Virus record (IMG/VR): IMGVR_UViG_3300043410_001471
Location: 124,001 to 188,000 of that record
Direction: 5' to 3' (one strand)
Length of the DNA stretch: 64,000 bases
The notes below the pieces were generated by a model. The model was given only the letters and a program-made list of their open reading frames with translations, did not search any database and had not been told where the DNA came from. The position numbers and the translations under genes are program-made. Positions 39,971 through 64,000 of this stretch are shown here, in pieces. Positions within the stretch are counted from its first letter, which is position 1, and every line of letters starts with the position of its first letter.

Positions 39971-40747
39971 ATGGCACAATACAAACATCTTACAACAGAA
40001 GAACTTCAACAAATGTCATTTGATTGGAGATACAGAGGATTCACTGTTTTGGAATTATTAACCGAAACTGAAGTGGATGAAATCAACGCAGAATTAGATA
40101 GATTACGATTGGAACGCAATGAAAGAGAGCCGGGAAAATGGCAAGAATTCGAACCAATTATGTATCCACATAGAGAATCTGCTTTAATTGAAAAATTATT
40201 CGCACATCCAAAAATTATGGAAGCATGTGAATTCCTAATGGAAGGAAATGTTGTTGGATTACAAACTTGGGGTTATTATAAACCAAAAGGTGAATTAGGA
40301 AGAGACCAACATCAAAATGCATTCTATACTGGTTGTGGACATAACGAAATCATCAACACTGCATTGGCATTGGATAATCACGACCCTGAAAACGGAGCAG
40401 TGTGGAATTATGAAGGTTCACATAGATTACCGGTTTTACCAATTGAAGATAACGAAGAAAGAAAAGCAACAAATACTGATAACTGGAGAAGTGAAAGAGG
40501 TAAAAGTTGTGTAATGCCAGAAGGACATGATTTCCGTAAAGTAGAAGGTTATTTGAAAAAAGGACAAGTTGCATTATTACACTCCCATGTTGTACATGGT
40601 TCAGAACCAAATAGAGACCCAAATAGAATGAGAAGAAATTTCTTAGGTGGGTATTTAAAAGAAGGTGCATATTTTAATCCAGGTAACCAAATGAAACGTG
40701 AACCAATTAATATGTACGAACTTCGTGCAAAACATTGGGGAGAGTAA
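39971..40747 (+). CDS. 2-oxoglutarate/Fe(II) dioxygenase, PhyH family
   Basis: HQN...LALDNHDPENGAVW..GSH...VVHGSEPN...RR; late motif upstream. Confidence 0.85.
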   Translation: MAQYKHLTTEELQQMSFDWRYRGFTVLELLTETEVDEINAELDRLRLERNEREPGKWQEFEPIMYPHRESALIEKLFAHPKIMEACEFLMEGNVVGLQTWGYYKPKGELGRDQHQNAFYTGCGHNEIINTALALDNHDPENGAVWNYEGSHRLPVLPIEDNEERKATNTDNWRSERGKSCVMPEGHDFRKVEGYLKKGQVALLHSHVVHGSEPNRDPNRMRRNFLGGYLKEGAYFNPGNQMKREPINMYELRAKHWGE

Positions 40748-40779
40748 TTTGGATAATTAAAATATTTTTCGTATATTTG
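40748..40779 (+). promoter_or_regulatory. Bacteroidota-type sigmaA promoter
   Basis: TTTG-N20-TATATTTG. Confidence 0.85.
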
Positions 40780-40785
40780 TAGGGT

Positions 40786-42054
40786 ATGAATTTAATAGAA
40801 ACTAAATCTGCCCTACATTTTTTTGTCAAATCAAATCCAACAATCGATTTGATAGTACCAGTATGGAGTTCTCACAAAGCACATCCATTTATGAATCGTA
40901 TATCGTTTATCTATTATAGATTGAACGATAATAGTGATGGTATAATAAACATCAATCACATCGATGCAAAGAAGATTGAAAAGTTTCCAATAGATGGACT
41001 GGTTGGTGAAAATACAATCGTATATGGAAGTAGATATGTAGCAACAAAAGGACTTGATTATGAGTGGGTATACTTTGAACAATATGGTAAACCCTTCATA
41101 TTCAGCGAGTTCGCTGAATCGGTTTATAAGGGGTATAGAATCGATTATAAAGAGTTGAATGATTGTATTCCTCTAATGAAGTGGTATGAGGTGTTAAAAG
41201 CAATGCCTGTACCAAATACGATTACTCAATCATCAATCACATATTCTTCAGCTATCCGAACACTTGGGAGGCTGGAGGGGGCTGGGGTGAAAGTCGAAGA
41301 AGAAAAATTTATTGATAGTTTTAGCCTTTCTAAAGATTACATCAAAAGAGGATTGGTGTTCACACAATACAATCCATATACAACAACGGGTAGACCTTCC
41401 AATAGACACTTAAACATTAACTACTCTGCCTTAAACAAATCGGATGGGAGTAGGGGGTGCTTCGTTAGTAGGAATCCAAAGGGAACTCTCTTACAATTTG
41501 ATTACGAATCTTATCACATACGATTGATTGCCAAATTGGTTGGATATGAATTTCCTAAAGGGGTTACCGCTCACCAACACCTTGCCGACTTATATGGATG
41601 TGATTACGAAACTGCGAAGAAGGTAACCTTTACATATTTGTATGGGGGGTTAGATGATAACGCTCGAAGAATTCCGTTCTTTCAAAAGGTAGAGGGGTAC
41701 ATTAGGGAACTATACCAAAAGTTCGTAATTTCGGGTCGTTTAACGACTCCTCTCTATAAGAGGGAAATCCATTTCTCAAAAATTGAAGGAGCGACTGAAC
41801 AAAAGGTATTCAACTATTTGTTACAGGCGTTAGAAACTGAAGTGAACTATATGAAGATTGAGAAGGTGTTGGATTTACTGAATGGTAAAATGAGTAAAAT
41901 GATTTTGTACACCTACGATGCGTTTCTTATAGATGTTCATCCTGTTGAAAGGGATTGGGTTTTGAGTGAAGTGAAAAGGATTATGGAGGTAGGTGGATTC
42001 CCTGTCAAAGTTGAAGAGGGAAGTAATTATGATAATTTAGTTGGAATAGAATAA
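40786..42054 (+). CDS. Divergent, compact family A DNA polymerase-like protein
   Basis: TTTGRPS, motif A FDYESYHIRLI, motif B AKKVTFTYLYG, NYLLQ, motif C YTYDAFL. Confidence 0.8.
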   Translation: MNLIETKSALHFFVKSNPTIDLIVPVWSSHKAHPFMNRISFIYYRLNDNSDGIININHIDAKKIEKFPIDGLVGENTIVYGSRYVATKGLDYEWVYFEQYGKPFIFSEFAESVYKGYRIDYKELNDCIPLMKWYEVLKAMPVPNTITQSSITYSSAIRTLGRLEGAGVKVEEEKFIDSFSLSKDYIKRGLVFTQYNPYTTTGRPSNRHLNINYSALNKSDGSRGCFVSRNPKGTLLQFDYESYHIRLIAKLVGYEFPKGVTAHQHLADLYGCDYETAKKVTFTYLYGGLDDNARRIPFFQKVEGYIRELYQKFVISGRLTTPLYKREIHFSKIEGATEQKVFNYLLQALETEVNYMKIEKVLDLLNGKMSKMILYTYDAFLIDVHPVERDWVLSEVKRIMEVGGFPVKVEEGSNYDNLVGIE

Positions 42055-44170: not shown

Positions 44171-44577
44171 TGAATACACAATTACTTTGCCTATTTACGA
44201 CAAAGGAAGAGTTAGATAAATCAGTTAGTTTCATACTAACAAACTATACTTTAACAAATCCAAATGTTTTCATTTTGGAAAGCAAAATGAAACCAGAAGA
44301 AGCATTTATCACATTTAATGTTGGTAAAGGTTCTTCAGCGATTACATCCGAATGGAAAACTATATTAGTTCATAGAAAGAAACAATCAAATACAATATAT
44401 ACAATTAACGCTTTGAATGAGGTAGTTAAATCTAAAACAGGTGGTATGTTGGATAATTCCTATATGATTGAATGGGACGAATTCAAAAATTGTATAATTA
44501 CTACATCAAGTATAGGATACAAAAAAATACCTACAAAAGTTTTCAAAAGTTTTAATACGAATGATTTGGAATTCTAA
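44170..44577 (+). CDS. Conserved-type hypothetical phage protein
   Basis: MNTQLLCLFT...TILVHRKKQSNTIYTINALN; coupled start. Confidence 0.7.
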   Translation: MNTQLLCLFTTKEELDKSVSFILTNYTLTNPNVFILESKMKPEEAFITFNVGKGSSAITSEWKTILVHRKKQSNTIYTINALNEVVKSKTGGMLDNSYMIEWDEFKNCIITTSSIGYKKIPTKVFKSFNTNDLEF

Positions 44578-44596
44578 TTTATTTTTCATATATTTG
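44565..44596 (+). promoter_or_regulatory. Bacteroidota-type sigmaA promoter
   Basis: TTTG-N20-TATATTTG. Confidence 0.85.
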
Positions 44597-44942: not shown

Positions 44943-45030
44943 TATCCATTTAGTGTACTTTCTTTACAATGGTAGGAAGCACAAAGAGTATTATGATTAT
45001 TTAAATAAAAAATGGAATATAAAAAAGTAG
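44905..45030 (+). CDS. Unannotated 41-aa ORF
   Basis: MKKLLKKIEFWIDIHLVYFLYNGRKHKEYYDYLNKKWNIKK*; bridges the gap and overlaps both neighbours. Confidence 0.5.
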   Translation: MKKLLKKIEFWIDIHLVYFLYNGRKHKEYYDYLNKKWNIKK

Positions 45031-45386
45031 TTATGCCAGAAATCAAAGAAGAAACAGCAAGAGAACATTGCGAAAGGGTGTACCCAGAAATGATGGAAGA
45101 ATTCAAAAAGATTCAAGCCGAAATGTATGAAACCTTTTGTAAGAAACAAAGGAATTACGGACCAGGTAACATTTCAGTAGGAACATCATTACAATCCAAA
45201 GAAGATATCAAATTATCACTCACAGGTCTTTGGTTCAGAATCAATGATAAGATTCAAAGATTGAAGCAATTGGTGGTTTTGGGACAGCCTGATGAGGTTG
45301 GTGAATCCATTCAAGATACATATGAAGATTTATCTGTATATGGTATTATTGCTCAATTGGTTCAAAGAGGAAAATGGGCAAAATAA
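45012..45386 (+). CDS. Nucleotide-modification-associated domain 1 (DUF1599) protein
   Basis: FCKKQRNYGPGNI...RINDKIQRL...ESIQDTYEDLSVYGII. Confidence 0.8.
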   Translation: MEYKKVVMPEIKEETAREHCERVYPEMMEEFKKIQAEMYETFCKKQRNYGPGNISVGTSLQSKEDIKLSLTGLWFRINDKIQRLKQLVVLGQPDEVGESIQDTYEDLSVYGIIAQLVQRGKWAK

Positions 45387-45418
45387 TTTGGAAAATTCAA
45401 AAAAACTTCGTATATTTG
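45387..45418 (+). promoter_or_regulatory. Bacteroidota-type sigmaA promoter
   Basis: TTTG-N20-TATATTTG. Confidence 0.85.
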
Positions 45419-49368: not shown

Positions 49369-49400
49369 TTTGTTAAATAATAAAATATTTCGTATATTTG
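49369..49400 (+). promoter_or_regulatory. Bacteroidota-type sigmaA promoter
   Basis: TTTG-N20-TATATTTG. Confidence 0.85.
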
Positions 49401-54248: not shown

Positions 54249-55289
54249 ATGGATAATTTTAAAGAATATATTGTAATAGATGATTCGGCTAAAGCTTTAT
54301 TAATAAATCGACCAATTCTTGTATTTTTTTCAAATGAAGAAATTGATGAATTATTAAAGTTTTATGAACAAAATTATAGAGAGTATAAGTTGATTTATTG
54401 TGAACGCGGTGAACCACTTACACACTCATCTATATTGCATTTGTATAGAATACATGAATTCTTTTTAGAAAACAAAATCAATACTAAAAAGTTTCATATT
54501 CTATATGAAAATAGAAGTAAAGAATATGAAAGTTTATTGGGATTTTTTCAATTTAATTTTTATTATTATCCATTTCATTTAAATTTTGTAACGCCGCCTA
54601 CATATTTTAATTCCGGTGAATATCCATTTCCATTGGATAGAAATTTTGAAAAACATTTTTTAATGTTAAATAGAACCGGAAAAGAACATAAGTTAAAATT
54701 TAAAACATTTTTTGATTCTAATAATTTAAAAGATGTATCGTATTATTCATTTTTATGGTTGAATGAACGCAATTTTGAAGAAAATTATATCCAATCTACA
54801 CACGCTAATCATGATGAATTGATTGACATATATAAAAATACGGCAATTAATGTACTGAATGAATCAAAATATTCATCGGAATTATTATCAATACCATATA
54901 CATTTATATCAGAAAAGACTTTTAGAGCATTGGCATTTCCTAGACCATTTATTGTAATAGGACAAAGACATACTTTAAAAAATTTACAAAAAATGGGATT
55001 TAGAACATTTTCTGATATAATAGATGAAAGTTATGATGAAATGAATGATTCGGAAAGAATGGATAAAATACAGGAAATAATTTTAGATTTATCGAAAAAA
55101 TCAAAAGAAGAAATTTATACAATGTGGGAGAAATGTATAGATAATTACGAACATAATAGAAAATCAATATTCTATCATGCAAGGCAAATGAATGAAAATT
55201 TTAAAACAATATTCCCAAATGAATATAAGATGATGAATATGCATTATTTATCATCAATTGAAAGAACTAAAAATTTAAAAGAATGGTAA
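54249..55289 (+). CDS. Putative glycosyltransferase (GT10/fucosyltransferase-like motif)
   Basis: KHFLMLNR...FISEKTFRALAFPRPFIVIG...GFRTFSDIIDESYD. Confidence 0.5.
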   Translation: MDNFKEYIVIDDSAKALLINRPILVFFSNEEIDELLKFYEQNYREYKLIYCERGEPLTHSSILHLYRIHEFFLENKINTKKFHILYENRSKEYESLLGFFQFNFYYYPFHLNFVTPPTYFNSGEYPFPLDRNFEKHFLMLNRTGKEHKLKFKTFFDSNNLKDVSYYSFLWLNERNFEENYIQSTHANHDELIDIYKNTAINVLNESKYSSELLSIPYTFISEKTFRALAFPRPFIVIGQRHTLKNLQKMGFRTFSDIIDESYDEMNDSERMDKIQEIILDLSKKSKEEIYTMWEKCIDNYEHNRKSIFYHARQMNENFKTIFPNEYKMMNMHYLSSIERTKNLKEW

Positions 55290-55546
55290 CAGTAAAGAAA
55301 TTTTCCGCAGCATGGTGTGGTCCATGTAGAGCATTAGCTCCAGTTATGAATGAAGTAAAATCTCAATTTTCAAATGTAGTATTTGAAGATTACGATGTAG
55401 ATGTTGCATATGATGAAGCAACAAAATACGGCATCCGTTCAGTACCAACAGTTGTTATTGAAAAAGATGGTAAAGAAGTTGAAAGATTTGCGGGAGCAGC
55501 AGCAAAGATGACTTATGTAAATGCATTGAATGAACATTTAAAGTAA
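55283..55546 (+). CDS. Thioredoxin
   Basis: FSAAWCGPC active site, GIRSVPT. Confidence 0.95.
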   Translation: MVTVKKFSAAWCGPCRALAPVMNEVKSQFSNVVFEDYDVDVAYDEATKYGIRSVPTVVIEKDGKEVERFAGAAAKMTYVNALNEHLK

Positions 55547-55588
55547 AATAAATTTGTGATTATCAAAAAAATTGGTTATATTAGACAT

Positions 55589-55789
55589 ATGTTAAGAGGA
55601 GAATCGCATCCAATGCATAAATTGACTGAAGAGCAGATAATGCAAATCAGAGAATTATACAAAGTGGGTCATAGAAATATCAAAGTTATTGCTAGGAACT
55701 ACAAAGTATCTCCTGCTAACATTAAGAAAATAGTTACAAACCAAACGTGGACACACATGATAAAGTGGCCGTATGAAAGAACTAAATAA
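55589..55789 (+). CDS. Small HTH DNA-binding protein (homing-endonuclease-type DNA-binding module)
   Basis: RGESHPMHKLTEEQIMQIRELY...IARNYKVSPANIKKIV...W; ATG at 55589. Confidence 0.7.
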   Translation: MLRGESHPMHKLTEEQIMQIRELYKVGHRNIKVIARNYKVSPANIKKIVTNQTWTHMIKWPYERTK

Positions 55790-56537
55790 GTTATATTGTG
55801 ATACATCGAAATTAATCGTAAGAGTAGTAAACAAAAATGTAGCAAAGGATATCATCGTTAATAACCATTATAGTGGGATATGGACGAAGGTATCCTATGC
55901 TATTGGATTGTTTTATGTTTCCAATGATGAACACAAATTCTTTGGTGGAGTAAACGAACAACTTATTGGAGTAGCGTGTTATGGTGACCCGGTGGGTAGA
56001 CACTCCGGCGCATCTATATCCGGAAATTTGGATAGAACGGAAGTTTTAGAACTTACCCGTTTATTTGTATTTGATGGTTATGGTAGTAATATTGAAAGTT
56101 GGTTCGTTGGACAAACTTTTGAGTGGTTAAGAAAAAACGCACCACACATCAAAGCATTGGTATCGTATTCAGACCCAAAAGCAGGACATTTAGGAACTGT
56201 ATATCAAGCAACTAATTGGATTTATCAGGGTAATAAGATTCGACCTAACGATAGTTGGTCTTTTAAATGGAGTGAAATAGATGAATGGCATCATAGTAGA
56301 ACTTCATATGTAAAGTATGGTACTAATGACCCAAAGATAATTCAAACAATGGTAGCATCGCCATTTTGGATTAAAAAAGAACCCCGAAAACATCGATATG
56401 TTTATATACTTTTGAATGGTAGAGAACGAAAAAAATTATTGAAATCGTTAAAGTATCCATCATTACCATATCCAAAAGCAAACGAAGAATTTATTGAAGA
56501 AATACATAAATTAGAACCAATTGAAAGTAGAAAATAA
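55773..56537 (+). CDS. Mom-family (GNAT-fold) DNA adenine modification protein, copy 1
   Basis: IIVNNHYS, IGVACYG, LELTRL, LVSYSDP..GHLGTVYQATNWIYQG, KHRYVY. Confidence 0.85.
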   Translation: MKELNKLYCDTSKLIVRVVNKNVAKDIIVNNHYSGIWTKVSYAIGLFYVSNDEHKFFGGVNEQLIGVACYGDPVGRHSGASISGNLDRTEVLELTRLFVFDGYGSNIESWFVGQTFEWLRKNAPHIKALVSYSDPKAGHLGTVYQATNWIYQGNKIRPNDSWSFKWSEIDEWHHSRTSYVKYGTNDPKIIQTMVASPFWIKKEPRKHRYVYILLNGRERKKLLKSLKYPSLPYPKANEEFIEEIHKLEPIESRK

Positions 56538-57324
56538 GTTATATTGTGATACCAGTAGAGTATCCATTAGAGAAATCAATAGTAATGTAGCCAAAGAGAT
56601 TATTGTTAAAAAGCACTACACTCACGCTTGGACTGCTTGTAGATATGCGTTAGGTATATTCTATAAAACTGATAATGAAAATGTAATCGGTGATGATGAA
56701 ATTCTAATCGGTTGTATGGTTTATGGATTTCCCGTAGGAGCAAGAGCATCCACATCCGTTTGTGAGGGATTAACCAAAGATAACATTTTGGAATTGACTC
56801 GTTTATATTGCGATGATGGGTATGGTTCGAATATTGAATCATACGCATTGGGACAATCGTTTAAATGGTTCAGAGAAAATGATAAAGATATCAAAGTACT
56901 CATTTCTTATGCAGATAACGGACAAGAACATTTAGGTGGTATTTACCAAGCAACTAATTGGATTTATCAGGGATTAAATACAGATATCGCCCTAATGCCA
57001 AACTATGGTATTTCATTATCAAATGACCCATTTAAATGGATTCATAGTAGGACTGTATTTACAAAATGGGGTAGTGGTAATCTGGAACATCTTCGTAGAG
57101 AAATTGGTAAGGATGGTTACAAAGAATTTTGGAGAAGGGAAGAACCACCAAAGCATAGATACATACAAATCATAGGAGCAGATAAAAAGGAGAAAAAGGA
57201 TTTAATTAAGAGATTAAAACATGAGGTTAGACCTTATCCTAAAAATGCTAGAGAATACAATAAAGGTGTTCAGCACCACACTACAATTGAACCAGATACC
57301 GAAATTTCGGTTAAATTCTGGTAA
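56521..57324 (+). CDS. Mom-family (GNAT-fold) DNA adenine modification protein, copy 2
   Basis: IIVKKHYT, IGCMVYG, LELTRL, LISYADN..EHLGGIYQATNWIYQG, KHRYI; TTG start. Confidence 0.85.
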   Translation: MKVENKLYCDTSRVSIREINSNVAKEIIVKKHYTHAWTACRYALGIFYKTDNENVIGDDEILIGCMVYGFPVGARASTSVCEGLTKDNILELTRLYCDDGYGSNIESYALGQSFKWFRENDKDIKVLISYADNGQEHLGGIYQATNWIYQGLNTDIALMPNYGISLSNDPFKWIHSRTVFTKWGSGNLEHLRREIGKDGYKEFWRREEPPKHRYIQIIGADKKEKKDLIKRLKHEVRPYPKNAREYNKGVQHHTTIEPDTEISVKFW

Positions 57325-57339
57325 ATATACCCCAAAATA

Positions 57340-57371
57340 TTTGGTAATATCAAATAATATTCGTATATTTG
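57340..57371 (+). promoter_or_regulatory. Bacteroidota-type sigmaA promoter
   Basis: TTTG-N20-TATATTTG. Confidence 0.85.
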
Positions 57372-57408
57372 AGTATATCAAAAGAGTTAAAATTTAAAAT
57401 TTAAAGTT

Positions 57409-59163
57409 ATGGCATTAAAACTTAGTTATGATGATTTTATTAAAGAAGTTGCTTATTTAAGAGCTGAGAAACTTCCGTATTGTGTATCAACAATGAACAC
57501 ATATTTTACAGCATATGTTATCAAATGGTCTGATTTAAAGTTCTATCCTAAAAATTATAAAGGCGAACTTCAACCACATGATATTCAAAATTCTCAATCA
57601 AATAGAAATCCATCAATTAATGTTAATTCGAAAAAGTTACCTAAGAAATTAGCATATGGAATTCGTATTATGGGAGGTAATTCATCTTTTAATTATTTAC
57701 CATTGGGTATTTTAGATGATACAATTGCACTTCAAGCTGAAGATAGAGGACATGAGGGTGGTGTATTATTCTTTAATTATGATACTAAATGGCCTATTAA
57801 AATTTGGAAAAGAGCTTTACAAATTTTAGAAACGGAAGTTATGGAATCCGAACAAACTTCCAATACAAAATTAATTATAAAATCTTTGAAATCATTGATG
57901 AATGATAAGAAAGTAAAGGAATTATCATTTGCGGAAATTGTTCCATTAGATATAAAGAAAGAAAAAGATAACGCTTATATTCCAATAGAATTGAAAGTAT
58001 ATCCTAATAGAACATTTCATAGAAGAGAAATTTTAGGAATTAATAATAATGAAGATACTTGGCAAACTCACCAAAAAGCAGTAGCTGAAGCTGAAATTGT
58101 TTTAGATGCAATTTATGGTGTGGGTAACGATTATTTTGATAAAATATATACACCAGTTGAAGGTAAAGCACTTTTTCAAGGTGAATTAACTATGTTAGCA
58201 AAACATGCAGCAGCTGGTCACAAAATGGAAAGATATGAAGAAGAACCAATTATGCTATGGTTAAGTTCTAGACAATATAGAAAAGATTCTTTGGACATTT
58301 ATAGAGGATTTGATTGTTCAACATTAAATACTCGCATTGCTCAATATAAAAAATTAGTTGAATCCATTTCTAAAGATAAAAAATTAGATGAATTAGTTAA
58401 AACGGAAGTAGATTTTTTAACTTACATATCAGAATGTGTTAATATAGACTCATTTGAAACAACGATTGATAATGTTGTTGCTAAATATAAAGGAAAATCT
58501 ACAACCAACATCAATGACCTTTCTATGACAAAAATGGATTCGGCTCTTATGATGGCTCAAATTATTAGAGATTATTTAGATACACGAACTGCTAGATTAA
58601 CAAAAGATGTTGTAATTACAGTTGGTAATAAAGTATTGAAAATGGCTTCTGAATTATTGGAGAATGAAAATGTTCAATCCGAATTAATTTCATCATCTAC
58701 CGGTGCTAATGGAAGATATAAGCAATTTTATATGAACTTAGAGGAGGAATTAAATGAATTACCATATGAAGAGGTTAGTGATGTTAAAGAAACATTGATT
58801 TCAAAAGCTAAACAGCAAATGGATTCATCTTTAAATCCAAATGGAGATATTCCAATGATTGATAGAGATGAAAATGCAAAATCGGTTTTTAAAATTGTTA
58901 TTGTAAATATTAACAAAGGTATCGGATTTGAAAAAGGGCATAAGAATGCTGGAATAGATAGTAAAGATATCGATAACTTTTTCTTACAATTTACAGGAGA
59001 TAATGGATTCTGGTCTAATAAAAGAGATTTTGAACCAAACACATATTCAGCTGAATATTTAAATTCAATAAAAGAATTTATGAAAACTAATGAGTTGAAT
59101 GATAATGATGAGTGGCAAGATGCATATCAAAATACTCGTAAATTTGTAACATCTGTTTGGTAA
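57409..59163 (+). CDS. Degenerate GmrSD-like protein (DUF262/ParB-like N-terminus + HNH-like C-terminus)
   Basis: Order of elements resembles DUF262 with EDRGHE in place of DGQQR; C-terminal FEKGH...DNFFLQ...DN..WSNK is HNH-like. Confidence 0.45.
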   Translation: MALKLSYDDFIKEVAYLRAEKLPYCVSTMNTYFTAYVIKWSDLKFYPKNYKGELQPHDIQNSQSNRNPSINVNSKKLPKKLAYGIRIMGGNSSFNYLPLGILDDTIALQAEDRGHEGGVLFFNYDTKWPIKIWKRALQILETEVMESEQTSNTKLIIKSLKSLMNDKKVKELSFAEIVPLDIKKEKDNAYIPIELKVYPNRTFHRREILGINNNEDTWQTHQKAVAEAEIVLDAIYGVGNDYFDKIYTPVEGKALFQGELTMLAKHAAAGHKMERYEEEPIMLWLSSRQYRKDSLDIYRGFDCSTLNTRIAQYKKLVESISKDKKLDELVKTEVDFLTYISECVNIDSFETTIDNVVAKYKGKSTTNINDLSMTKMDSALMMAQIIRDYLDTRTARLTKDVVITVGNKVLKMASELLENENVQSELISSSTGANGRYKQFYMNLEEELNELPYEEVSDVKETLISKAKQQMDSSLNPNGDIPMIDRDENAKSVFKIVIVNINKGIGFEKGHKNAGIDSKDIDNFFLQFTGDNGFWSNKRDFEPNTYSAEYLNSIKEFMKTNELNDNDEWQDAYQNTRKFVTSVW

Positions 59164-59181
59164 TATAATAGTAAAATTAAT

Positions 59182-60285
59182 ATGAATAAATTTTGGGATT
59201 CCGAAATAGGTAATTTTGATAAGAAGGTATTAGTAGTACCCAATTATACTCACTTTGGTGAAGGTAAAAATATAAACGCAGATTCGTTTGTGTTAGTTAT
59301 GAAATCATTTTTAGATAACACTAATTATGATAATTTACAATTTATAATTCCATATCCAAATGGATATATGCCAACGGATTTTATGAAGTATAAAAATGTA
59401 AAACTTATTAATATGGGGAATGTTTCTACATTTCCCCCATTAATGAGAATTCAATTCCCCGATTCTGCATTTAAAAAGATATTTTCTGAAGAAGGAATTG
59501 ATATCATTTGGTCACATTTGCCGGAATGGACTAATCAATTATTAATCGTTCGTAGATACAACACAGTAACTCAACCTGTTTTGGGTTATTGCCATTGGTG
59601 GGAGATTCCTGAAAATGGTGCATATAATCATAATTCCTTTTGGGCAAATGTGCAAGGTATGTTGAAAATGAGTGTATGTGGGGTAAACTCACAATGGGTT
59701 AAGAATTTAGTATTAAAAAGAGCAAGTGGGTTTTTGAATAAAGAACAATTAGAAAAATTAGATACAATCATTCAGCCTTGGTATTTAGGATGCGATGAGT
59801 GGCAAGAAGGAATTGTAAAACCAAAAACTATTTTATTCAATCATAGAGCAGATGGGTATACCGGTGCTGATTGGTTTTTTGAAGAGATGGATAAGTTGTG
59901 GGAACAAAGACAAGATTTTAAAGTTCTTACATCCATAGCTAGTGTTTCAAAACCATATACGGAATCAATCCGACATCCTAATAGAGAACATTATAAACAA
60001 AATGTAGGAAGCGCTGATATTGGTGTTGGATGTTTTACAAAATATTCAGCATGGAGTATGAGTACAACTGATGGGTTGAGTATGAATGTACCATATATTT
60101 TACCAAAAGGATTGTGCTATGAAGAAATGGTTGGAGAAGATTATCCATTACTTTATAATGGTAAAAAGGAATTTGTAAAAATGTTAGTAGATTACTTAGA
60201 TGGTAAAATAGAAAGACCTAACACAAAAAAAATGGCTGAGAAGTTATATTGGAAACATAGTTTAGAAAATTGGAAAATTATATAA
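59182..60285 (+). CDS. Glycosyltransferase (GT-B), candidate DNA-modifying enzyme
   Basis: IDIIWSHLPE, GYCHW, ILFNHR, WSMSTTDGLSMNVPYILP; located in the replication operon. Confidence 0.7.
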   Translation: MNKFWDSEIGNFDKKVLVVPNYTHFGEGKNINADSFVLVMKSFLDNTNYDNLQFIIPYPNGYMPTDFMKYKNVKLINMGNVSTFPPLMRIQFPDSAFKKIFSEEGIDIIWSHLPEWTNQLLIVRRYNTVTQPVLGYCHWWEIPENGAYNHNSFWANVQGMLKMSVCGVNSQWVKNLVLKRASGFLNKEQLEKLDTIIQPWYLGCDEWQEGIVKPKTILFNHRADGYTGADWFFEEMDKLWEQRQDFKVLTSIASVSKPYTESIRHPNREHYKQNVGSADIGVGCFTKYSAWSMSTTDGLSMNVPYILPKGLCYEEMVGEDYPLLYNGKKEFVKMLVDYLDGKIERPNTKKMAEKLYWKHSLENWKII

Positions 60286-60286
60286 T

Positions 60287-61513
60287 ATGAAATTTTGGGA
60301 TACAGGTGAACAAACCAACACAGAAGTATTTGACTACGATGAGATGAAAAAGAAGTTCATTGAGAACTTGGATTATCTTAAAGAAATGTCAGTAGAAGAG
60401 CAAACTCTATACAAAAAATGGATGGAGTGGAATGAAGATTTAATTGGTAATATGCGAAAATTACCTGCTTTACAACAACATTATGATTCGTTGTGGAAAC
60501 CGACTGATATTATGGATAAGGAATTAACGATAAAAGAAATCGAAGGATTGCAACCATATATTGAAGTTGTAGAAGATAATCCAAAAGAATCTACTCGTTG
60601 GACTGAAATCCGTAGATTAATTCATACTATGGAGTTTCAGGCAAATCCAGGTCGTAATGTAAAGTGCTATGTTAAAGATAGAACAAGCGGAAAGATATTA
60701 GGACAAGTTTGTTTAGGTTCAGACATTACATCATTGGGTGTGAGAGATGCATACATTGGTTGGCAGAAAGAAGATAAGTTTCAAAATGGTAAATTGAATT
60801 GTACTACTATTGCAACTACAATCGTATCAACCCAACCATTTGGATATAATTTCTTAGGTGGTAAGTTAATTGCAGCATTGGCAACTGCACCTGAAGTTAG
60901 AGATTACTGGCAAAAGAAATACAACAATCCATTGATTGGAGTAGGTACAACATCATTGTATGGTATTCACTCACAATACAATGGTATTCCTCATTTCAAA
61001 ACATTGGGAGAATCTAAAGGTAAGATTTCTACAAAGCCAGATGATAAGGTATACGACCCATGGCATCAATGGTTGAAAGAAAATCGTTCTGAATGGTATA
61101 AGCAACACATTATGGATGAGAGAGAACGAAATGGTGCTAATATGGGATACGATAGAAACGGACCTGTAAGTGGAATCAAACAAAAGATTATTCAGGCAAT
61201 TTTTAAAGAGTTGGGAATCAAAGGAAACGCTTATGACCACGGATTCCAAAGAGGTGTGTATTTCGCACAAATGTATGAGAATGGTAATGAGTTCCTTTGT
61301 TCTAAAATCGAAGAGAAGGATTTAGTTCTTAAAAAGAAATTCGCTGATGGTAATGATTATACTATCAAATGGTGGAAAGATAAAGCAATTAAGAGATATA
61401 CTAAATTGCATGAAGAAGGTAAAATTAAACCCGAAGTTTTATTCTATATTGATGCAATTGGAATGACTTGGGAACAAATGAAAGAACATTACTTAAAAGA
61501 AGTGGGAAGATAA
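60287..61513 (+). CDS. DUF4338 (DruA-like) protein
   Basis: PGRNVKCYVKDRTSGKILG, RDAYIGW, QPFGYNFLGGKLIAAL, TTSLYG..SQYN, LGESKG. Confidence 0.8.
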   Translation: MKFWDTGEQTNTEVFDYDEMKKKFIENLDYLKEMSVEEQTLYKKWMEWNEDLIGNMRKLPALQQHYDSLWKPTDIMDKELTIKEIEGLQPYIEVVEDNPKESTRWTEIRRLIHTMEFQANPGRNVKCYVKDRTSGKILGQVCLGSDITSLGVRDAYIGWQKEDKFQNGKLNCTTIATTIVSTQPFGYNFLGGKLIAALATAPEVRDYWQKKYNNPLIGVGTTSLYGIHSQYNGIPHFKTLGESKGKISTKPDDKVYDPWHQWLKENRSEWYKQHIMDERERNGANMGYDRNGPVSGIKQKIIQAIFKELGIKGNAYDHGFQRGVYFAQMYENGNEFLCSKIEEKDLVLKKKFADGNDYTIKWWKDKAIKRYTKLHEEGKIKPEVLFYIDAIGMTWEQMKEHYLKEVGR

Positions 61514-61516
61514 AAT

Positions 61517-64000
61517 ATGTATCAAAATATATACTACGAAAGAAGCAAGAATTTAATTCATCTATGGGATGATACCAATGGATACCAAACATTTCCATAC
61601 CGAAAATATGCCTACAAAAAAGACCCATATGGACAGCATCGTTCAATGTATGGGGATAAGTTATCTCGTATTTCAAAGTGGGAAAAGGATGAGGCCGAAG
61701 ATTTATTCGAATCGGATGTACCAGAAACAACGAGAGTATTGGTAGATATCTATGATAATGATTTACCATCAAAAGGACATACAGTATTAACATTTGACAT
61801 TGAGGTAGAAATGATATCAGGTCTACCAAACACACGAGAAGCTCAAAACGAAATCACAGCAATCGCAGCACACGATTCTATTACAAAAGAATATGAAGTG
61901 TTCGTATTAGATAAAGAAAGAAAAGTTAAAAACAATGCTACTAATTTTAGTAAAAACGGCAGAGAGGTTAAAGTACACATATTTGACAACGAAAGGAATT
62001 TATTATTTGCATTTCTTAATTATTACCAACAAGTTGACCCGACTATTCTAACGGGTTGGAACATTGATTTTTTCGATATTCCATATCTTTACAATCGTAT
62101 TAAGAATGTTTGTGGAGAGGGACATGCTAAGAGATTATCTCGTATCGGAGAAGCATTCTGGTCACCATATAGAGAGAAGTTTAGTTTTGGTGGTGTGAGT
62201 GTATTGGATTACATCAATTTGTATAAAACATACACATATACATTGGAAGCATCTTATACATTGAACTACATCGCTACCAAAGAATTGGGTAGAGGTAAGG
62301 TGGAGTATGAGGGAAGTTTGGATGATTTATTTGTAAACGATTTGGAGAAATTCATTGAGTATAACATTGTCGATGTGGAGTTGGTTGTAGCAATGGATGC
62401 CAAATTACAATTCATTGAATTATGTAGAGCCGTTTGTCACGCTGGATTTGTTCCATATGAAGATTACATATTTTCATCAAAGTGGTTAGAAGGAGCTTGT
62501 TTAGGATATCTTAAAAAGAAAGGATTGGTAGCAACCAATAAACCAAAAGATAGAAAGGAAAGAATGCAAGCTCTTAGAGATAATAACGAAGAGAAATTCA
62601 TTGGAGCATATGTAAAAGAACCTATCGTTGGTAAGTATGATTGGATTTATGATTTGGACTTAACATCTCTATATCCATCAATCATTATGACTTTGAATAT
62701 CAGTCCCGAAACAAAGATTGGTAAGATTCAGAATTGGGATGCTGAAGCAAATATCAGAGGGTTAGATACTACATACAAAGTAGTTGGTAAAGATGGTGAT
62801 ACTTATGAATATACGACTCAGGAACTAAAGGAAGTTATTAAGGATAGTAATTTAGGTGTTGCGGCAAATGGAGTTCTCTATTCACAAGATTCACCGGGTT
62901 TGATTGCCGATATCTTAAATGATTGGTTTCAAAAGCGTGTTGAGTTCCGTAAATTAGAAAAGAAATATGGTACGGAAGGTGATACTGAAAAGTATGAATT
63001 CTATGCTAAAAGACAGCTAGTACAAAAGATTCTTTTGAACTCAATGTATGGTGTATTGGGTTTACCAGCATTTCGATTCTATGATGTGGATAACGCTGAA
63101 GCAGTAACCCTAACAGGTCAAACTGTTATTAAGAAAACAGCAGAGATGGCAAACATCAAATATTGGAAAGAACTCGGAACTAAAGAGGATTATAATGTGT
63201 ACATCGATACTGATTCCATTTATATGATGGCAGAACCTTTGGTAAAACATAGATACCCTGAATATAAAACATTTGACCAAAATCGAATGGCTGAAGAGGT
63301 AAATACTATTGCCGAAGAAACTCAAACATTTTTGAACACATTCTATGATATGTTGGCTGAAAAGTTCTTCTTTATTCCAAAAGAGAAACATAGATTTGAG
63401 ATTAAGAAAGAATACATTAGTAAAGCAGGATTTTGGGTAGCAAAGAAGAGATATGCACAATGGATGATTCTAAAAAATGGTGTACCTTGTGATAAGTTGG
63501 ATGTTAAAGGATTGGATGTGGTTCGTTCATCATTTCCTAAAGCATTTCAGGACTTTATGGCTAAAATGTTGAAAGATATTTTAATGGGTAAGGATAACGC
63601 ATTTATGGATGAATCTTTATTGGATTTCAAAAAGAATATGATTAATCTACCTGTAAACAAAATAGCAAAGGGTGGAGCAATTAAGGAGTTAAGTAAGTAT
63701 GATAATGGTAGTTGGAGAAAAGATGGTGGAGAAGCTATCGCATCATTTGAAAAGGGAACACCTGCACACGTTAAAGCTGGAATCACTTACAATCGATTAT
63801 TAAAATTCTTCAATTGTCCATTTAAGCATGAACCAATTAGAGATGGTGATAAAGTAAAGTGGGTATATCTTAAAACAAATCCATTGGGATTAGATACTGT
63901 TGCATTTAAGGATTATAATGACCCAAAAGAGATTATGGATTTCGTAGAACAATATGTTGATAGAGATATGATTTATAAAGCAGAGTTGGAAAACAAAGTA
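61517..64000 (+). CDS. DNA polymerase family B (gp43-like), 3'-partial
   Basis: Not in the track because no stop occurs before the window end. Exo motifs FDIEV, GWNIDFFDIPY and YNIVDV; polymerase motifs DLTSLYPS (about 62657), KILLNSMYG (about 63025) and YIDTDS (about 63200). Confidence 0.97.
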   Translation, partial: MYQNIYYERSKNLIHLWDDTNGYQTFPYRKYAYKKDPYGQHRSMYGDKLSRISKWEKDEAEDLFESDVPETTRVLVDIYDNDLPSKGHTVLTFDIEVEMISGLPNTREAQNEITAIAAHDSITKEYEVFVLDKERKVKNNATNFSKNGREVKVHIFDNERNLLFAFLNYYQQVDPTILTGWNIDFFDIPYLYNRIKNVCGEGHAKRLSRIGEAFWSPYREKFSFGGVSVLDYINLYKTYTYTLEASYTLNYIATKELGRGKVEYEGSLDDLFVNDLEKFIEYNIVDVELVVAMDAKLQFIELCRAVCHAGFVPYEDYIFSSKWLEGACLGYLKKKGLVATNKPKDRKERMQALRDNNEEKFIGAYVKEPIVGKYDWIYDLDLTSLYPSIIMTLNISPETKIGKIQNWDAEANIRGLDTTYKVVGKDGDTYEYTTQELKEVIKDSNLGVAANGVLYSQDSPGLIADILNDWFQKRVEFRKLEKKYGTEGDTEKYEFYAKRQLVQKILLNSMYGVLGLPAFRFYDVDNAEAVTLTGQTVIKKTAEMANIKYWKELGTKEDYNVYIDTDSIYMMAEPLVKHRYPEYKTFDQNRMAEEVNTIAEETQTFLNTFYDMLAEKFFFIPKEKHRFEIKKEYISKAGFWVAKKRYAQWMILKNGVPCDKLDVKGLDVVRSSFPKAFQDFMAKMLKDILMGKDNAFMDESLLDFKKNMINLPVNKIAKGGAIKELSKYDNGSWRKDGGEAIASFEKGTPAHVKAGITYNRLLKFFNCPFKHEPIRDGDKVKWVYLKTNPLGLDTVAFKDYNDPKEIMDFVEQYVDRDMIYKAELENKV

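What the first reader, a model, noticed from the sequence alone, without database searches (positions are those of the whole stretch)
55589..61513. Putative multi-enzyme DNA hypermodification locus coupled to the replicative polymerase
Seen: HTH - Mom-like 1 - Mom-like 2 - [promoter] - GmrSD-like - GT-B glycosyltransferase - DUF4338 - PolB, tightly packed or overlapping, with an Nmad1 gene at 45012. Known: Mu Mom is a GNAT-fold enzyme that acylates adenine N6 to block restriction; T-even GT-B enzymes glycosylate DNA bases; DUF4338 is the DruA component of Druantia, with unknown chemistry; Nmad1 is linked to base-modification systems. Inference: two diverged Mom paralogs (different sequence specificity or a heterodimer), DUF4338 as a further GNAT-like transferase, and a GT build one layered or several parallel base modifications. 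I do not recognise this combination as a characterised pathway. This is the best candidate for an undescribed system in the window.
Basis: partly seen in the sequence, partly recalled or inferred. Interest (0 to 1): 0.82.

Follow-up and report, generated by a model that had tools for sequence, protein, structure and literature searches.

The report
Phage DNA-modification island with swappable nuclease
A freshwater T4-like jumbo phage carries, between its thioredoxin and DNA polymerase genes, a six-gene island with three acyltransferase-fold enzymes, a sugar transferase and a fast-swapping GmrSD-like nuclease; it probably decorates phage DNA in an undescribed way, but no chemistry has been shown.

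Summary
- HTH: 55589-55789.
- Two Mom-family GNATs, 43% identical: 55773-56537 and 56521-57324.
- A promoter-like element: 57340-57371.
- A 584-aa protein, GmrSD-like only by predicted fold and motifs: 57409-59163.
- A GT-B/GT4-like glycosyltransferase: 59182-60285.
- A DruA/DUF4338 protein whose model matches only GNAT folds: 60287-61513.
- PolB from 61517.

The block is an island. The closest cultured relative by PolB, Microcystis phage Mel-JY01, has Trx followed by two small ORFs and PolB, with no such block.

A survey of about 170 viral loci shows modules rather than one fixed pathway.
- DruA is old and widespread in T4-like aquatic phages.
- A [ParB/DUF262-HNH-type protein + GT] cassette sits beside DruA in two lineages.
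- The Mom pair is specific to this lineage.
- The nuclease-like slot holds at least five unrelated-looking families next to a nearly constant GT.

Best reading: a DNA modification island plus a modification-discriminating nuclease cassette. "Coupled to the polymerase" is only gene order, and the Nmad1 call is below threshold. This is a new variant of a known kind. All chemistry is inferred.

The parts
55589..55789 (+). Small HTH protein (66 aa from the ATG at 55589; the ORF opens at a GTG at 55556). It is always found immediately upstream of the Mom genes.
   Evidence: Pfam HTH_7 24.0 bits, cut-off 23.8. PHROG HTH DNA-binding protein. The start is shared with orthologues. It is conserved next to Mom in the locus survey.
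55773..56537 (+). Mom1: Mom-family GNAT (254 aa). Its start overlaps the HTH stop by 17 nt.
   Evidence: PF25680 150 bits. Matches 8bv8 Mu Mom at 3e-10. R111, S124, Y159 and W181 equivalents are kept. The R151 equivalent is K in 31 of 31 orthologues.
56521..57324 (+). Mom2: second Mom-family GNAT (267 aa, TTG start). It overlaps Mom1 by 17 nt and is 43% identical to it.
   Evidence: PF25680 150.4 bits. BLASTP against Mom1 8e-72. R111 and S124 are kept. The R151 equivalent is G in 41 of 43 orthologues. It is present without Mom1 in L013, L023, L024, L026, L030, L043 and L044.
57340..57371 (+). Promoter-like element TTTGG-N-TTCGTATATTTG, which also marks the boundary of the variable cassette slot.
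   Evidence: Five + strand copies lie just upstream of genes (40748, 44565, 45387, 49369, 57340). The 12-mer with up to one mismatch gives 7 matches against 0.79 expected. It is conserved downstream of Mom2 in all cassette variants. Contig loose ends pile up at 57336-57339 and 57369-57371.
57409..59163 (+). g584: a divergent GmrSD-like protein. The N-terminal part is ParB/DUF262-like with an invariant EDRGH (111-115). The C-terminal part has a beta-beta-alpha His-Me/HNH-like motif (H511, N523, N532). It occupies the variable slot.
   Evidence: It belongs to an orphan family of 31 proteins. AF2 pLDDT is 87.7. BFVD hits are GmrSD_N/DUF262 proteins at E 2.3e-4 to 1e-2. The PDB fold search was not significant. 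Motifs were compared with bona fide DGQQR/DGQHR + HNH proteins found in the same slot. It is related to the L055/L069 slot family (hhalign 92%).
59182..60285 (+). GT-B (GT4-like) glycosyltransferase, 'type A'. It is always directly downstream of a slot protein.
   Evidence: Atlas 0.99 to viral and GT4 clusters, with structure neighbours that include queuosine mannosyltransferase-like GT-B proteins. Ten of 19 homologues hit Glyco_transf_4 and Glycos_transf_1. There was no PDB sequence hit.
60287..61513 (+). DruA/DUF4338-family protein (408 aa) with a GNAT-fold core and a conserved QPFGYN..GGK loop.
   Evidence: PF14236 72.6 bits. PADLOC DruA 1e-20. AF2 pLDDT 92.9. All top-50 Foldseek PDB hits are GNAT-fold proteins, best E 7.7e-3, probability up to 0.99. 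The family has 1058 clusters at 50% identity. Fusions to ParB_N and to UDG exist.
61517..64000 (+). Family B replicative DNA polymerase (runs off the window). It is the conserved right flank of the island, not shown to be functionally coupled.
   Evidence: The frame is open to the window end. 50.5% identical to Microcystis phage Mel-JY01 PolB. In Mel-JY01 the order is Trx, two small ORFs, PolB.
55283..55546 (+). Thioredoxin: the conserved left flank of the island.
   Evidence: PF00085 70 bits. Thioredoxin also precedes PolB in Mel-JY01.

Best explanation
The region is an accessory island inserted between the conserved thioredoxin and PolB genes of a freshwater T4-like jumbo phage (245-kb contig). 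It is built from three separable modules.

1. HTH + Mom1 + Mom2. These are two translationally coupled Mom-type GNATs. By analogy with Mu Mom, they would transfer an aminoacyl group from charged tRNA to N6 of adenine in duplex DNA after replication. The two paralogues differ fixedly at one Mu-essential position (R151 becomes K in Mom1 and G in Mom2). This suggests different donors or sequence contexts rather than redundancy.

2. DruA-family GNAT. This is an old gene of aquatic T4-like phages that sits among replication and recombination genes. Relatives are fused to ParB_N or UDG domains. I infer that it also acts on DNA as an acyl or aminoacyl transferase.

3. A two-gene cassette transcribed from its own promoter-like element: a ParB/DUF262-HNH-type (GmrSD-like) protein followed by a GT-B glycosyltransferase. 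I infer that the GT adds a sugar to a group on phage DNA installed by the GNATs or by an enzyme outside the window. I infer that the GmrSD-like protein is a nuclease that reads modification state and spares DNA carrying the phage's own mark. It would cut host DNA or the DNA of co-infecting relatives. The pair would then behave like a restriction-modification pair and be swapped in an arms race.

Shown: gene identities and folds, the island nature, the modular co-occurrence and the hypervariable slot. Inferred: every substrate, the DNA target of DruA and the GT, and nuclease activity.
For: Island nature:
- The closest cultured PolB relative has Trx followed by two small ORFs and PolB, with no island.

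Mom pair:
- Both score 150 bits to PF25680.
- The catalytic R111 and S124 of Mu Mom (PMC13219725) are invariant in every orthologue, while the R151 position differs fixedly between paralogues.

DruA:
- The Pfam and PADLOC matches hold.
- The confident model matches only GNAT folds.
- PMC10853773 calls DUF4338 a GNAT.
- ParB_N-DruA and UDG-DruA fusions exist.
- It sits in replication/recombination modules of cultured pelagimyophages.

DruA-GT linkage:
- Among loci with at least 4 kb on both sides, GT lies within 4 kb of DruA in 24 of 30 loci of the window's lineage.
- The same holds in 9 of 12 loci of a lineage whose DruA is only about 40% identical and whose neighbours differ.

Cassette:
- In every locus examined the slot protein sits immediately upstream of a GT.
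- Slot families include canonical DGQQR+HNH proteins (GmrSD_N 1.3e-7), DGQHR+HNH proteins and a ParB_N protein.
- g584 matches GmrSD_N proteins by fold. It shares the H..N-x8-N motif and has invariant H511, D531 and N532.
- A nearly identical GT-A (87-95% identity) pairs with four different slot families.
- The promoter-like element marks the swap boundary.
Against: - No chemistry or nuclease activity has been measured.
- g584 has no significant sequence match to any named family, and its PDB fold search was not significant.
- DruA shows no profile similarity to Mom. The Foldseek E-values for its GNAT hits are only about 1e-2.
- GNAT and GT-B enzymes act on many non-DNA substrates.
- No hydroxymethylase or TET-type gene that could supply a hydroxyl acceptor was seen in the 64-kb window. 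Only a quarter of the genome is visible.
- DruA occurs without GT or Mom in pelagimyophage-type loci (0 of 15), and several close relatives lack any GT. The modules can therefore work alone.
- The surveyed loci are related, so the co-occurrence counts are not independent events.
Confidence: 0.5

Rival explanations
1. The island is a hyperplastic insertion hot spot holding functionally unrelated accessory genes. Only the Mom genes modify DNA. DruA-like is a protein or small-molecule acetyltransferase. The GT glycosylates a non-DNA substrate (protein, cell-envelope precursor, tRNA base). The GmrSD-like genes are selfish or exclusion nucleases that happen to land there.
For: - The modules occur separately: DruA alone in pelagimyophage-type loci, Mom absent from lineage 2, and GT absent in several close relatives.
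- The same intergenic positions also receive free-standing homing endonucleases (GIY-YIG in L016, HNH-NUMOD3 in L063) and a DNA methylase (L026).
- A conserved promoter element sits at the swap boundary, as expected for a shuffling hot spot.
- Structure neighbours of the GT include tRNA-queuosine mannosyltransferase-like enzymes.
Against: - A slot protein with GT sits directly next to DruA in two lineages that differ in surrounding genes.
- DruA relatives are fused to the DNA-acting domains ParB_N and UDG.
- In every locus examined the slot protein is immediately upstream of a GT rather than scattered.
Confidence: 0.27
2. The slot proteins are not nucleases. They are ParB-superfamily activators or DNA-targeting partners of the adjacent glycosyltransferase or of DruA, like the ParB proteins that switch on cognate phage thymine dioxygenases.
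For: - PMC13229309 shows that phage ParB homologues activate cognate 5mYOX DNA-modifying enzymes.
- The slot proteins share ParB, DUF262 or DGQHR-type N-terminal motifs.
- ParB_N is fused to DruA in relatives.
- The slot protein is strictly adjacent to GT.
Against: - Three slot families keep an HNH-type H..N..N motif, and in g584 it is invariant.
- The same GT-A (87-95% identical) is paired with four unrelated slot families. This is the opposite of the cognate-pair specificity reported for ParB and 5mYOX.
- GT type B usually has no slot partner at all.
Confidence: 0.15
3. The phage DruA homologue is an anti-defence decoy that interferes with host Druantia type I by mimicking DruA. It is not an enzyme of a phage pathway.
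For: The match to DruA profiles is clear. Phages are known, from general knowledge, to carry homologues of defence components.
Against: - The family is very large and conserved in phages: 1058 clusters at 50% identity, present in pelagimyophages and many cyanomyophages.
- It has nearly invariant enzyme-like motifs.
- No DruB-E partners occur nearby; no ORF in the window exceeds 968 aa.
- It is linked to GT and fused to ParB or UDG domains.
Confidence: 0.05

Closest known systems
Phage Mu Mom (tRNA-dependent N6-adenine glycyl transfer giving 6-NcmdA; PDB 8bv8; PMC13219725)
   Same: Mom1 and Mom2 are clear PF25680 members. They keep R111, S124, H58/Y59, Y159 and W181 equivalents. They are expected to act after replication on duplex DNA.
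   Different: There are two diverged paralogues (43% identical) in tandem, each with a fixed replacement of Mu-essential R151 (K or G). They are preceded by an HTH gene rather than Com. They are embedded with a DruA GNAT, a GT and a GmrSD-like gene in a lytic T4-like jumbo phage. Donor and product are unknown.
DruA (DUF4338) of Druantia type I anti-phage defence
   Same: The same Pfam and PADLOC family. The GNAT fold was already noted by Aravind and colleagues (PMC10853773).
   Different: It is encoded by a phage with no DruB-E. Its neighbours are GT, Mom and PolB. The phage branch is huge and includes cultured pelagimyophages and cyanomyophages. No biochemical function of DruA turned up in the literature searches run here.
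GmrSD / BrxU / SspE type IV (modification-dependent) DUF262-HNH nucleases
   Same: The predicted fold of g584 matches viral GmrSD_N/DUF262 proteins. It has a C-terminal H..N..N beta-beta-alpha motif. Proteins in the same slot in sister phages have canonical DGQQR or DGQHR plus DH..N..N.
   Different: No sequence-profile match was found. It has EDRGH instead of DGQQR. It is phage-encoded and paired with a glycosyltransferase instead of being a host defence gene. Its activity and specificity are unknown.
T-even phage DNA glucosyltransferases and other phage DNA glycosyltransferase clusters (MT-5mYOX-GT; 10.1101/2023.12.21.572611, PMC13326640)
   Same: A phage-encoded GT-B-type transferase sits among DNA-metabolism genes next to base-modifying enzymes.
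   Different: A profile of the GT family gave no PDB-sequence hit even at E 10. No hydroxymethyl-pyrimidine pathway (methyltransferase/TET or dNMP hydroxymethylase) was seen in the window. The partners here are GNATs, so the acceptor would have to be a different chemical group.
Promoter-early stem-loop (PeSL) mobile cassettes of T4-type phages
   Same: A short conserved promoter element flanks a gene slot whose content is shuffled among related genomes.
   Different: The motif resembles a -33/-7 TTTG / TAnnTTTG promoter. No stem-loop was tested. The analogy is a lead only.

Membership tests
Mom family (PF25680, Mu Mom-type GNAT) | Profile match above the curated cut-off over the full domain | tested here: met
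   Mom1 150 bits and Mom2 150.4 bits against a cut-off of 27.1, covering profile positions 2-202 of 202. PHROG 1384 at 3.5e-52 and 4e-48.
Mom family (PF25680, Mu Mom-type GNAT) | Residues essential for Mu Mom catalysis: R111 and S124 (PMC13219725) | tested here: met
   Both are invariant in 31 Mom1, 43 Mom2 and 5 third-type orthologues.
Mom family (PF25680, Mu Mom-type GNAT) | Third essential residue, R151 | tested here: not met
   K in all 31 Mom1 orthologues and G in 41 of 43 Mom2 orthologues.
Mom family (PF25680, Mu Mom-type GNAT) | Gly-tRNA-dependent transfer to N6-adenine of dsDNA | not testable with these tools
   This needs biochemistry. No tRNA gene is present in the window.
DruA / DUF4338 (PF14236) | Profile match above the curated cut-off | tested here: met
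   72.6 bits against a cut-off of 27, covering profile positions 15-295 of 297. PADLOC DruA 1e-20.
DruA / DUF4338 (PF14236) | GNAT fold of the core domain | tested here: met
   The model has pLDDT 92.9. All 50 best PDB matches are GNAT-fold proteins, with probability up to 0.99. E-values are only 7.7e-3 and above. This agrees with PMC10853773.
Druantia type I defence system | DruA encoded together with DruB, DruC, DruD and the large DruE helicase | tested here: not met
   The neighbours are GT and PolB. The largest ORF in the 64-kb window is 968 aa. There are no other PADLOC Druantia hits among the island proteins.
GmrSD-type DUF262-HNH nucleases | N-terminal DUF262 (GmrSD_N) domain with the DGQQR motif | tested here: inconclusive
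   There is no Pfam hit for g584 or any of its 19 aligned relatives, and the motif is EDRGH. By fold, the best named BFVD matches are GmrSD_N/DUF262 proteins (E 5.9e-4 to 1e-2). The PDB fold search was not significant.
GmrSD-type DUF262-HNH nucleases | C-terminal His-Me/HNH (DUF1524-type) nuclease motif | tested here: inconclusive
   The model shows beta-beta-alpha topology at 507-535. H511, D531 and N532 are invariant and N523 is nearly invariant. The N-x8-N spacing is the same as in slot families b and c, which give weak HNH hits. There is no profile hit for g584 itself.
GmrSD-type DUF262-HNH nucleases | Cleavage that depends on DNA modification state | not testable with these tools
   This needs an enzyme assay.
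GT-B fold glycosyltransferases (GT4-like) | Match to the Glyco_transf_4 (N-terminal) and Glycos_transf_1 (C-terminal) domains | tested here: inconclusive
   The window protein has no hit of its own. Ten of 19 aligned homologues hit both domains (best 6e-5). The lineage-2 GT scores 32.8 bits against a cut-off of 26.4. The Atlas score is 0.99 with 224 of 256 shared features to viral clusters whose models resemble GT4 enzymes.
T4 alpha/beta-glucosyltransferase-type DNA glycosyltransferases | Detectable sequence relationship to solved DNA glucosyltransferases | tested here: not met
   Neither the single sequence nor the family profile gave a relevant PDB match, even at E 10.
Nmad1 (DUF1599, PF07659) for the gene at 45012-45386 | Profile match above the curated cut-off | tested here: not met
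   22.9 bits against a cut-off of 25, covering only profile positions 18-58 of 61.

The most novel reading that the evidence does not exclude
DruA-family GNATs are DNA base acyl or aminoacyl transferases. In this phage, three GNATs (Mom1, Mom2, DruA) and a GT-B enzyme together build a glycosylated aminoacyl or acyl purine, a class of hypermodification not yet described. The adjacent, rapidly swapped GmrSD-like nucleases cut DNA that carries the base mark without the sugar. Each [nuclease + GT] cassette would then be a phage-borne, modification-dependent restriction-modification pair used against co-infecting relatives. By extension, DruA in Druantia type I would be the self-marking enzyme, the counterpart of the DruM methylase of type II.
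Probability: 0.15. Interest if true: 0.9.

Novelty: new variant of a known kind. Interest (0 to 1): 0.62.

Why it matters
Mom's chemistry was solved only recently, and the paper that solved it leaves the reactions of Mom-like GNATs open for further study. My searches found no experimental function for DruA/DUF4338, although it names a defence-system component and is common in abundant aquatic T4-like phages, including cultured pelagimyophages and cyanomyophages.

This island places a DruA GNAT next to two diverged Moms, a glycosyltransferase and a ParB/HNH-type protein. That gives a compact, clonable gene set for three questions:
- Does DruA modify DNA?
- Can Mom paralogues use other donors?
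- Do phages carry restriction-modification-like [type IV nuclease + glycosyltransferase] cassettes?

If DNA is modified, this would matter for metagenomic sequencing bias, for phage-host arms-race models in freshwater plankton, and for understanding Druantia type I.

Tried and rejected
- Sequence searches of g584 against Pfam, PHROGs, PADLOC, NCBIfam and PDB found nothing, either as a single sequence or as a 20-member profile or member-by-member scan.
- Foldseek of the g584 model against PDB was not significant. The best E was 0.33, with SspE, ParB/Noc and a DndBCDE-DndI entry only as weak hits.
- The Atlas search of the g584 C-terminal part scored 0.72 (DndB, AIPR). That is a lead only.
- hhalign of the g584 family against slot families b, c and d showed no relationship, so homology between slot families is not claimed.
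- hhalign of the DruA family against the Mom family gave probability 0.3%. 'DruA is a diverged Mom' is rejected at sequence level; only the shared GNAT fold stands.
- The DruA PDB sequence search returned only spurious designed-protein hits.
- The GT profile against PDB sequences returned no hit. GT-A against cultured phages returned no match.
- Contigs encoding the ParB_N-DruA and UDG-DruA fusions are only 2-4 kb long and give no context.
- The Iyer et al. 2013 paper that introduced the Nmad domains, as I recall it, was not held under the PMC id and DOI I tried from memory.
- The generic sigma-70 and terminator scan was not above chance.
- Stop-codon recoding was considered and rejected. All genes, including PolB, are open in table 11.
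- The metatranscriptome run X25 holds 85-95%-similar contigs over Mom1, Mom2, g584 and DruA. The tool warns that DNA may be present in the library, so expression is not claimed.

Full report
**Observation.** The + strand between 55283 and the window end is a tightly packed gene row:
- Trx, 55283-55546.
- A small HTH protein. The ORF opens at a GTG at 55556, but the ATG at 55589 matches the start used by orthologues.
- Mom1, 55773-56537.
- Mom2, 56521-57324 (TTG start).
- An 84-nt gap.
- A 584-aa gene, 57409-59163.
- A 367-aa gene, 59182-60285.
- A 408-aa gene, 60287-61513.
- A family B polymerase from 61517 that runs off the window without stops.

Mom1 overlaps the HTH gene by 17 nt and Mom2 overlaps Mom1 by 17 nt. 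The remaining gaps are 18, 1 and 3 nt.

**Family assignments.**
- Thioredoxin scores 70 bits. HTH_7 scores 24.0 bits, just above its cut-off.
- Mom PF25680 scores 150 bits for each paralogue.
- DruA PF14236 scores 72.6 bits, confirmed by PADLOC DruA at 1e-20.
- The 584-aa and 367-aa proteins hit nothing in Pfam, PHROGs, PADLOC, NCBIfam or PDB sequences.
- The 'Nmad1' gene at 45012 reaches only 22.9 bits against a cut-off of 25.

**Source.** The window is 100% identical to part of a 245-kb IMG/VR contig. It occurs in freshwater metagenomes. It carries T4-type structural and replication genes: gp19, baseplate, gp32, UvsX/RecA, DnaB-like helicase, RNR and GroES. The closest cultured PolB is that of Microcystis phage Mel-JY01, at 50.5% identity. 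In that phage, thioredoxin is followed by two small ORFs and then PolB. The six genes from the HTH gene to DruA are therefore an island inserted between two conserved replication-module genes.

**The Mom pair.** Mu Mom is now known to be a GNAT that transfers glycine from Gly-tRNAGly to N6 of adenine in dsDNA. The glycyl group then rearranges on the base to carbamoylmethyl. R111, S124 and R151 are essential (PMC13219725).
- Both window proteins align to the Mu Mom structure 8bv8 and are 43% identical to each other.
- Across 79 orthologues from related contigs, the R111, S124 and Y159 equivalents are invariant. The H58/Y59 equivalents are invariant wherever that position is present in the called ORF.
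- The R151 position is K in all 31 Mom1 orthologues, G in 41 of 43 Mom2 orthologues, and T or E in a third, shorter paralogue found in a sister clade.
- Both therefore look active but have diverged in a fixed way.
- Seven relatives keep only Mom2, so an obligate heterodimer is unlikely.

**The DruA-like protein.** The family is very large: 1058 clusters at 50% identity and 3151 hits in the 90% database.
- Some members carry N-terminal ParB_N, UDG or DUF3102 domains.
- A profile-profile comparison with the Mom family found nothing (probability 0.3%).
- A confident AF2 model (pLDDT 92.9) gave 50 of 50 best PDB matches to GNAT-fold enzymes. Probabilities reach 0.99, but E-values are only 7.7e-3 and above.
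- This agrees with a statement in PMC10853773 that DUF4338 is a GNAT domain.
- Nearly invariant residues include a QP.G....GGKL loop after the fourth strand, the usual place of the GNAT cofactor-binding loop (the placement is my inference from general GNAT knowledge).
- Homologues occur in cultured Pelagibacter myophages (Mosig, HTVC008M) and many T4-like cyanophages. One of these is annotated 'methylcarbamoylase mom'.
- In the two pelagimyophage records examined, the gene sits in the gp46/gp47, peptide deformylase and clamp region without a GT or a Mom.

**The glycosyltransferase.**
- The Atlas search gave 0.99 with 224 of 256 shared features to viral clusters. The structure neighbours of the top hit are GT4/GT-B enzymes and queuosine-mannosyltransferase-like proteins.
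- In an alignment of 19 homologues from related loci, 10 members hit Glyco_transf_4 and Glycos_transf_1.
- The GT of a more distant lineage passes the Pfam cut-off.
- No relation to solved DNA glucosyltransferases was detectable by sequence.

**The 584-aa protein.** It belongs to an orphan family of 31 sequences.
- Invariant motifs are QNS.SNR, EDRGH (111-115), EEE, DR (485-486), GH (510-511) and FLQ..DN.
- The AF2 model (pLDDT 87.7) places EDRGH between a strand and a helix. It gives the C-terminus a beta-beta-alpha arrangement, with H511 at the end of a strand and N532 in the helix.
- The PDB fold search was not significant.
- Against BFVD, the best named matches are GmrSD_N/DUF262 proteins. 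Three matches have E of 1e-3 or less. AIPR, DndB-like and HNH-domain proteins follow further down the list.
- 'GmrSD-like' is therefore reasonable at the level of fold and motifs, and no more than that.

**Neighbourhood survey.** I fetched 83 loci through DruA and g584 and 90 more through two divergent DruA representatives.
- In the window's lineage the conserved order is Trx, HTH, Mom1, Mom2, [slot], [GT type A], DruA, [GT type B, about 29% identical], PolB.
- A sister clade has the order Mom, GT, PolB, short ORF(s), DruA. The short ORFs are a conserved 231-239-aa protein of no known family and, in some loci, a third Mom-like gene.
- The slot holds at least five families that look unrelated by sequence:
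  - g584 and the distantly related L055/L069 type.
  - A DGQHR + HNH type.
  - A canonical DGQQR + DH..N..N type (GmrSD_N 1.3e-7).
  - A ParB_N type.
  - In L026, a DNA methylase lies between Mom2 and DruA.
- In every locus examined, a slot protein is directly upstream of a GT.
- GT type A at 87-95% identity is paired with four different slot families.
- In the lineage whose DruA is about 40% identical, the order DruA, [slot], GT recurs among different neighbours. One of its slot proteins is a g584 relative.
- With at least 4 kb of flank on both sides:

| Lineage | GT within 4 kb of DruA | Mom within 4 kb of DruA |
|---|---|---|
| Window's lineage | 24 of 30 | 22 of 30 |
| About 40%-identity lineage | 9 of 12 | 2 of 12 |
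| Pelagimyophage-like lineage | 0 of 15 | 0 of 15 |

These loci are related, so the counts are descriptive only.

**Promoter and cassette boundary.** The 84-nt gap contains TTTGG-N-TTCGTATATTTG.
- Five + strand copies lie just upstream of genes in the window. The 12-mer with up to one mismatch is found 7 times against 0.79 expected.
- The element is conserved downstream of Mom2 whatever follows it: one of four slot families, or DruA directly. A copy also precedes the slot gene that lies after DruA.
- In metagenome contigs laid on the region, loose ends pile up at 57336-57339 and 57369-57371.
- Single contigs join 57371 to 59174 (dropping g584 exactly) and 57175 to 60285 (dropping g584 and GT). 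Their short sides are only 26-28 letters, so this is weak evidence.

**Interpretation.** The evidence fits a modular DNA-modification island, not one fixed pathway. The Mom pair and DruA are predicted active GNATs. DruA's fusions and replication-module context point to DNA. The GT's recurrent adjacency to DruA suggests that it elaborates a group on DNA.

The slot proteins look like modification-reading nucleases. Their rapid replacement beside a constant GT fits a restriction-modification-like or exclusion role better than a cognate-activator role. The activator role does have a precedent in the ParB-dependent thymine dioxygenases (PMC13229309).

None of the chemistry is shown. The link to PolB is gene order only.

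**Literature.** No paper in the searched library held both 'DUF4338' and 'Mom', or both 'DruA' and 'GNAT'. The other searches turned up no description of this gene combination.

Noticed in passing
window 40748-40779, 44565-44596, 45387-45418, 49369-49400, 57340-57371 (+ strand): A repeated promoter-like element, TTTGG-N(17-18)-TTC(G/A)TATATTTG, lies immediately upstream of genes. It resembles a -33 TTTG / -7 TAnnTTTG (Bacteroidota-type) promoter, although the nearest cultured PolB relative infects Microcystis. It may hint at the host or be a phage-specific early or middle promoter.
   Followed up: partly
L026:3484-4395: In one relative, an N6/N4 DNA methyltransferase (PF01555, 3.9e-23) sits between Mom2 and DruA, where other relatives have the nuclease-like slot protein.
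   Followed up: no
L016:3836-4420; L063:1398-2012; protein P0292: Free-standing homing-endonuclease-type genes are inserted next to DruA or PolB in relatives (GIY-YIG; HNH+NUMOD3+I-TevI DNA-binding domain). One DruA homologue carries LAGLIDADG_3 and NUMOD3 domains. The locus is a hot spot for mobile nucleases.
   Followed up: no
L065:1872-2483, L067:6651-7262, L069:6640-7251, L078:588-1199, L023:3155-3784: A third, shorter Mom-like paralogue (about 204 aa) keeps R111 and S124 but has T or E at the R151 position and R or A at the W181 position. In a sister clade it lies between PolB and DruA.
   Followed up: partly
L045:5550-6269 and 22 similar loci: A conserved 231-239-aa protein with no Pfam family lies directly upstream of DruA in the clade where PolB precedes DruA.
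   Followed up: no
L096, L113-L115, L119-L128: Short DruA-like ORFs of about 230 aa occur either as a second copy near a full-length DruA or alone. They may be truncated paralogues or a separate subfamily.
   Followed up: no
L015:8866-11169: The PolB match is split into four pieces in different frames. This may be a frameshifted, interrupted or mis-assembled polymerase gene in that contig.
   Followed up: no
window 39971-40747 and 40786-42054: A PhyH-type 2OG-Fe(II) dioxygenase (63 bits) is followed by a 422-aa protein with a sub-threshold DNA_pol_A match (31.7 bits against a cut-off of 34.3). The latter is odd beside a family B replicative polymerase.
   Followed up: no
L095:8272-9174: A RimK-type ATP-grasp ligase (173 bits) lies about 0.8 kb upstream of DruA in the second lineage. 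It could make or extend an amino-acid-type adduct, which would be worth testing alongside DruA.
   Followed up: no
PQ898602.1 134000-134782 (Synechococcus phage S-SCSM2R): A DruA-family homologue in a cultured cyanophage is annotated 'methylcarbamoylase mom'. This shows that annotation pipelines already conflate DUF4338 with Mom.
   Followed up: no
window 54249-55289: A 346-aa ORF between RNR and Trx has no family in any library. It is poorly conserved (42-50% identical, or absent) in otherwise close relatives.
   Followed up: no
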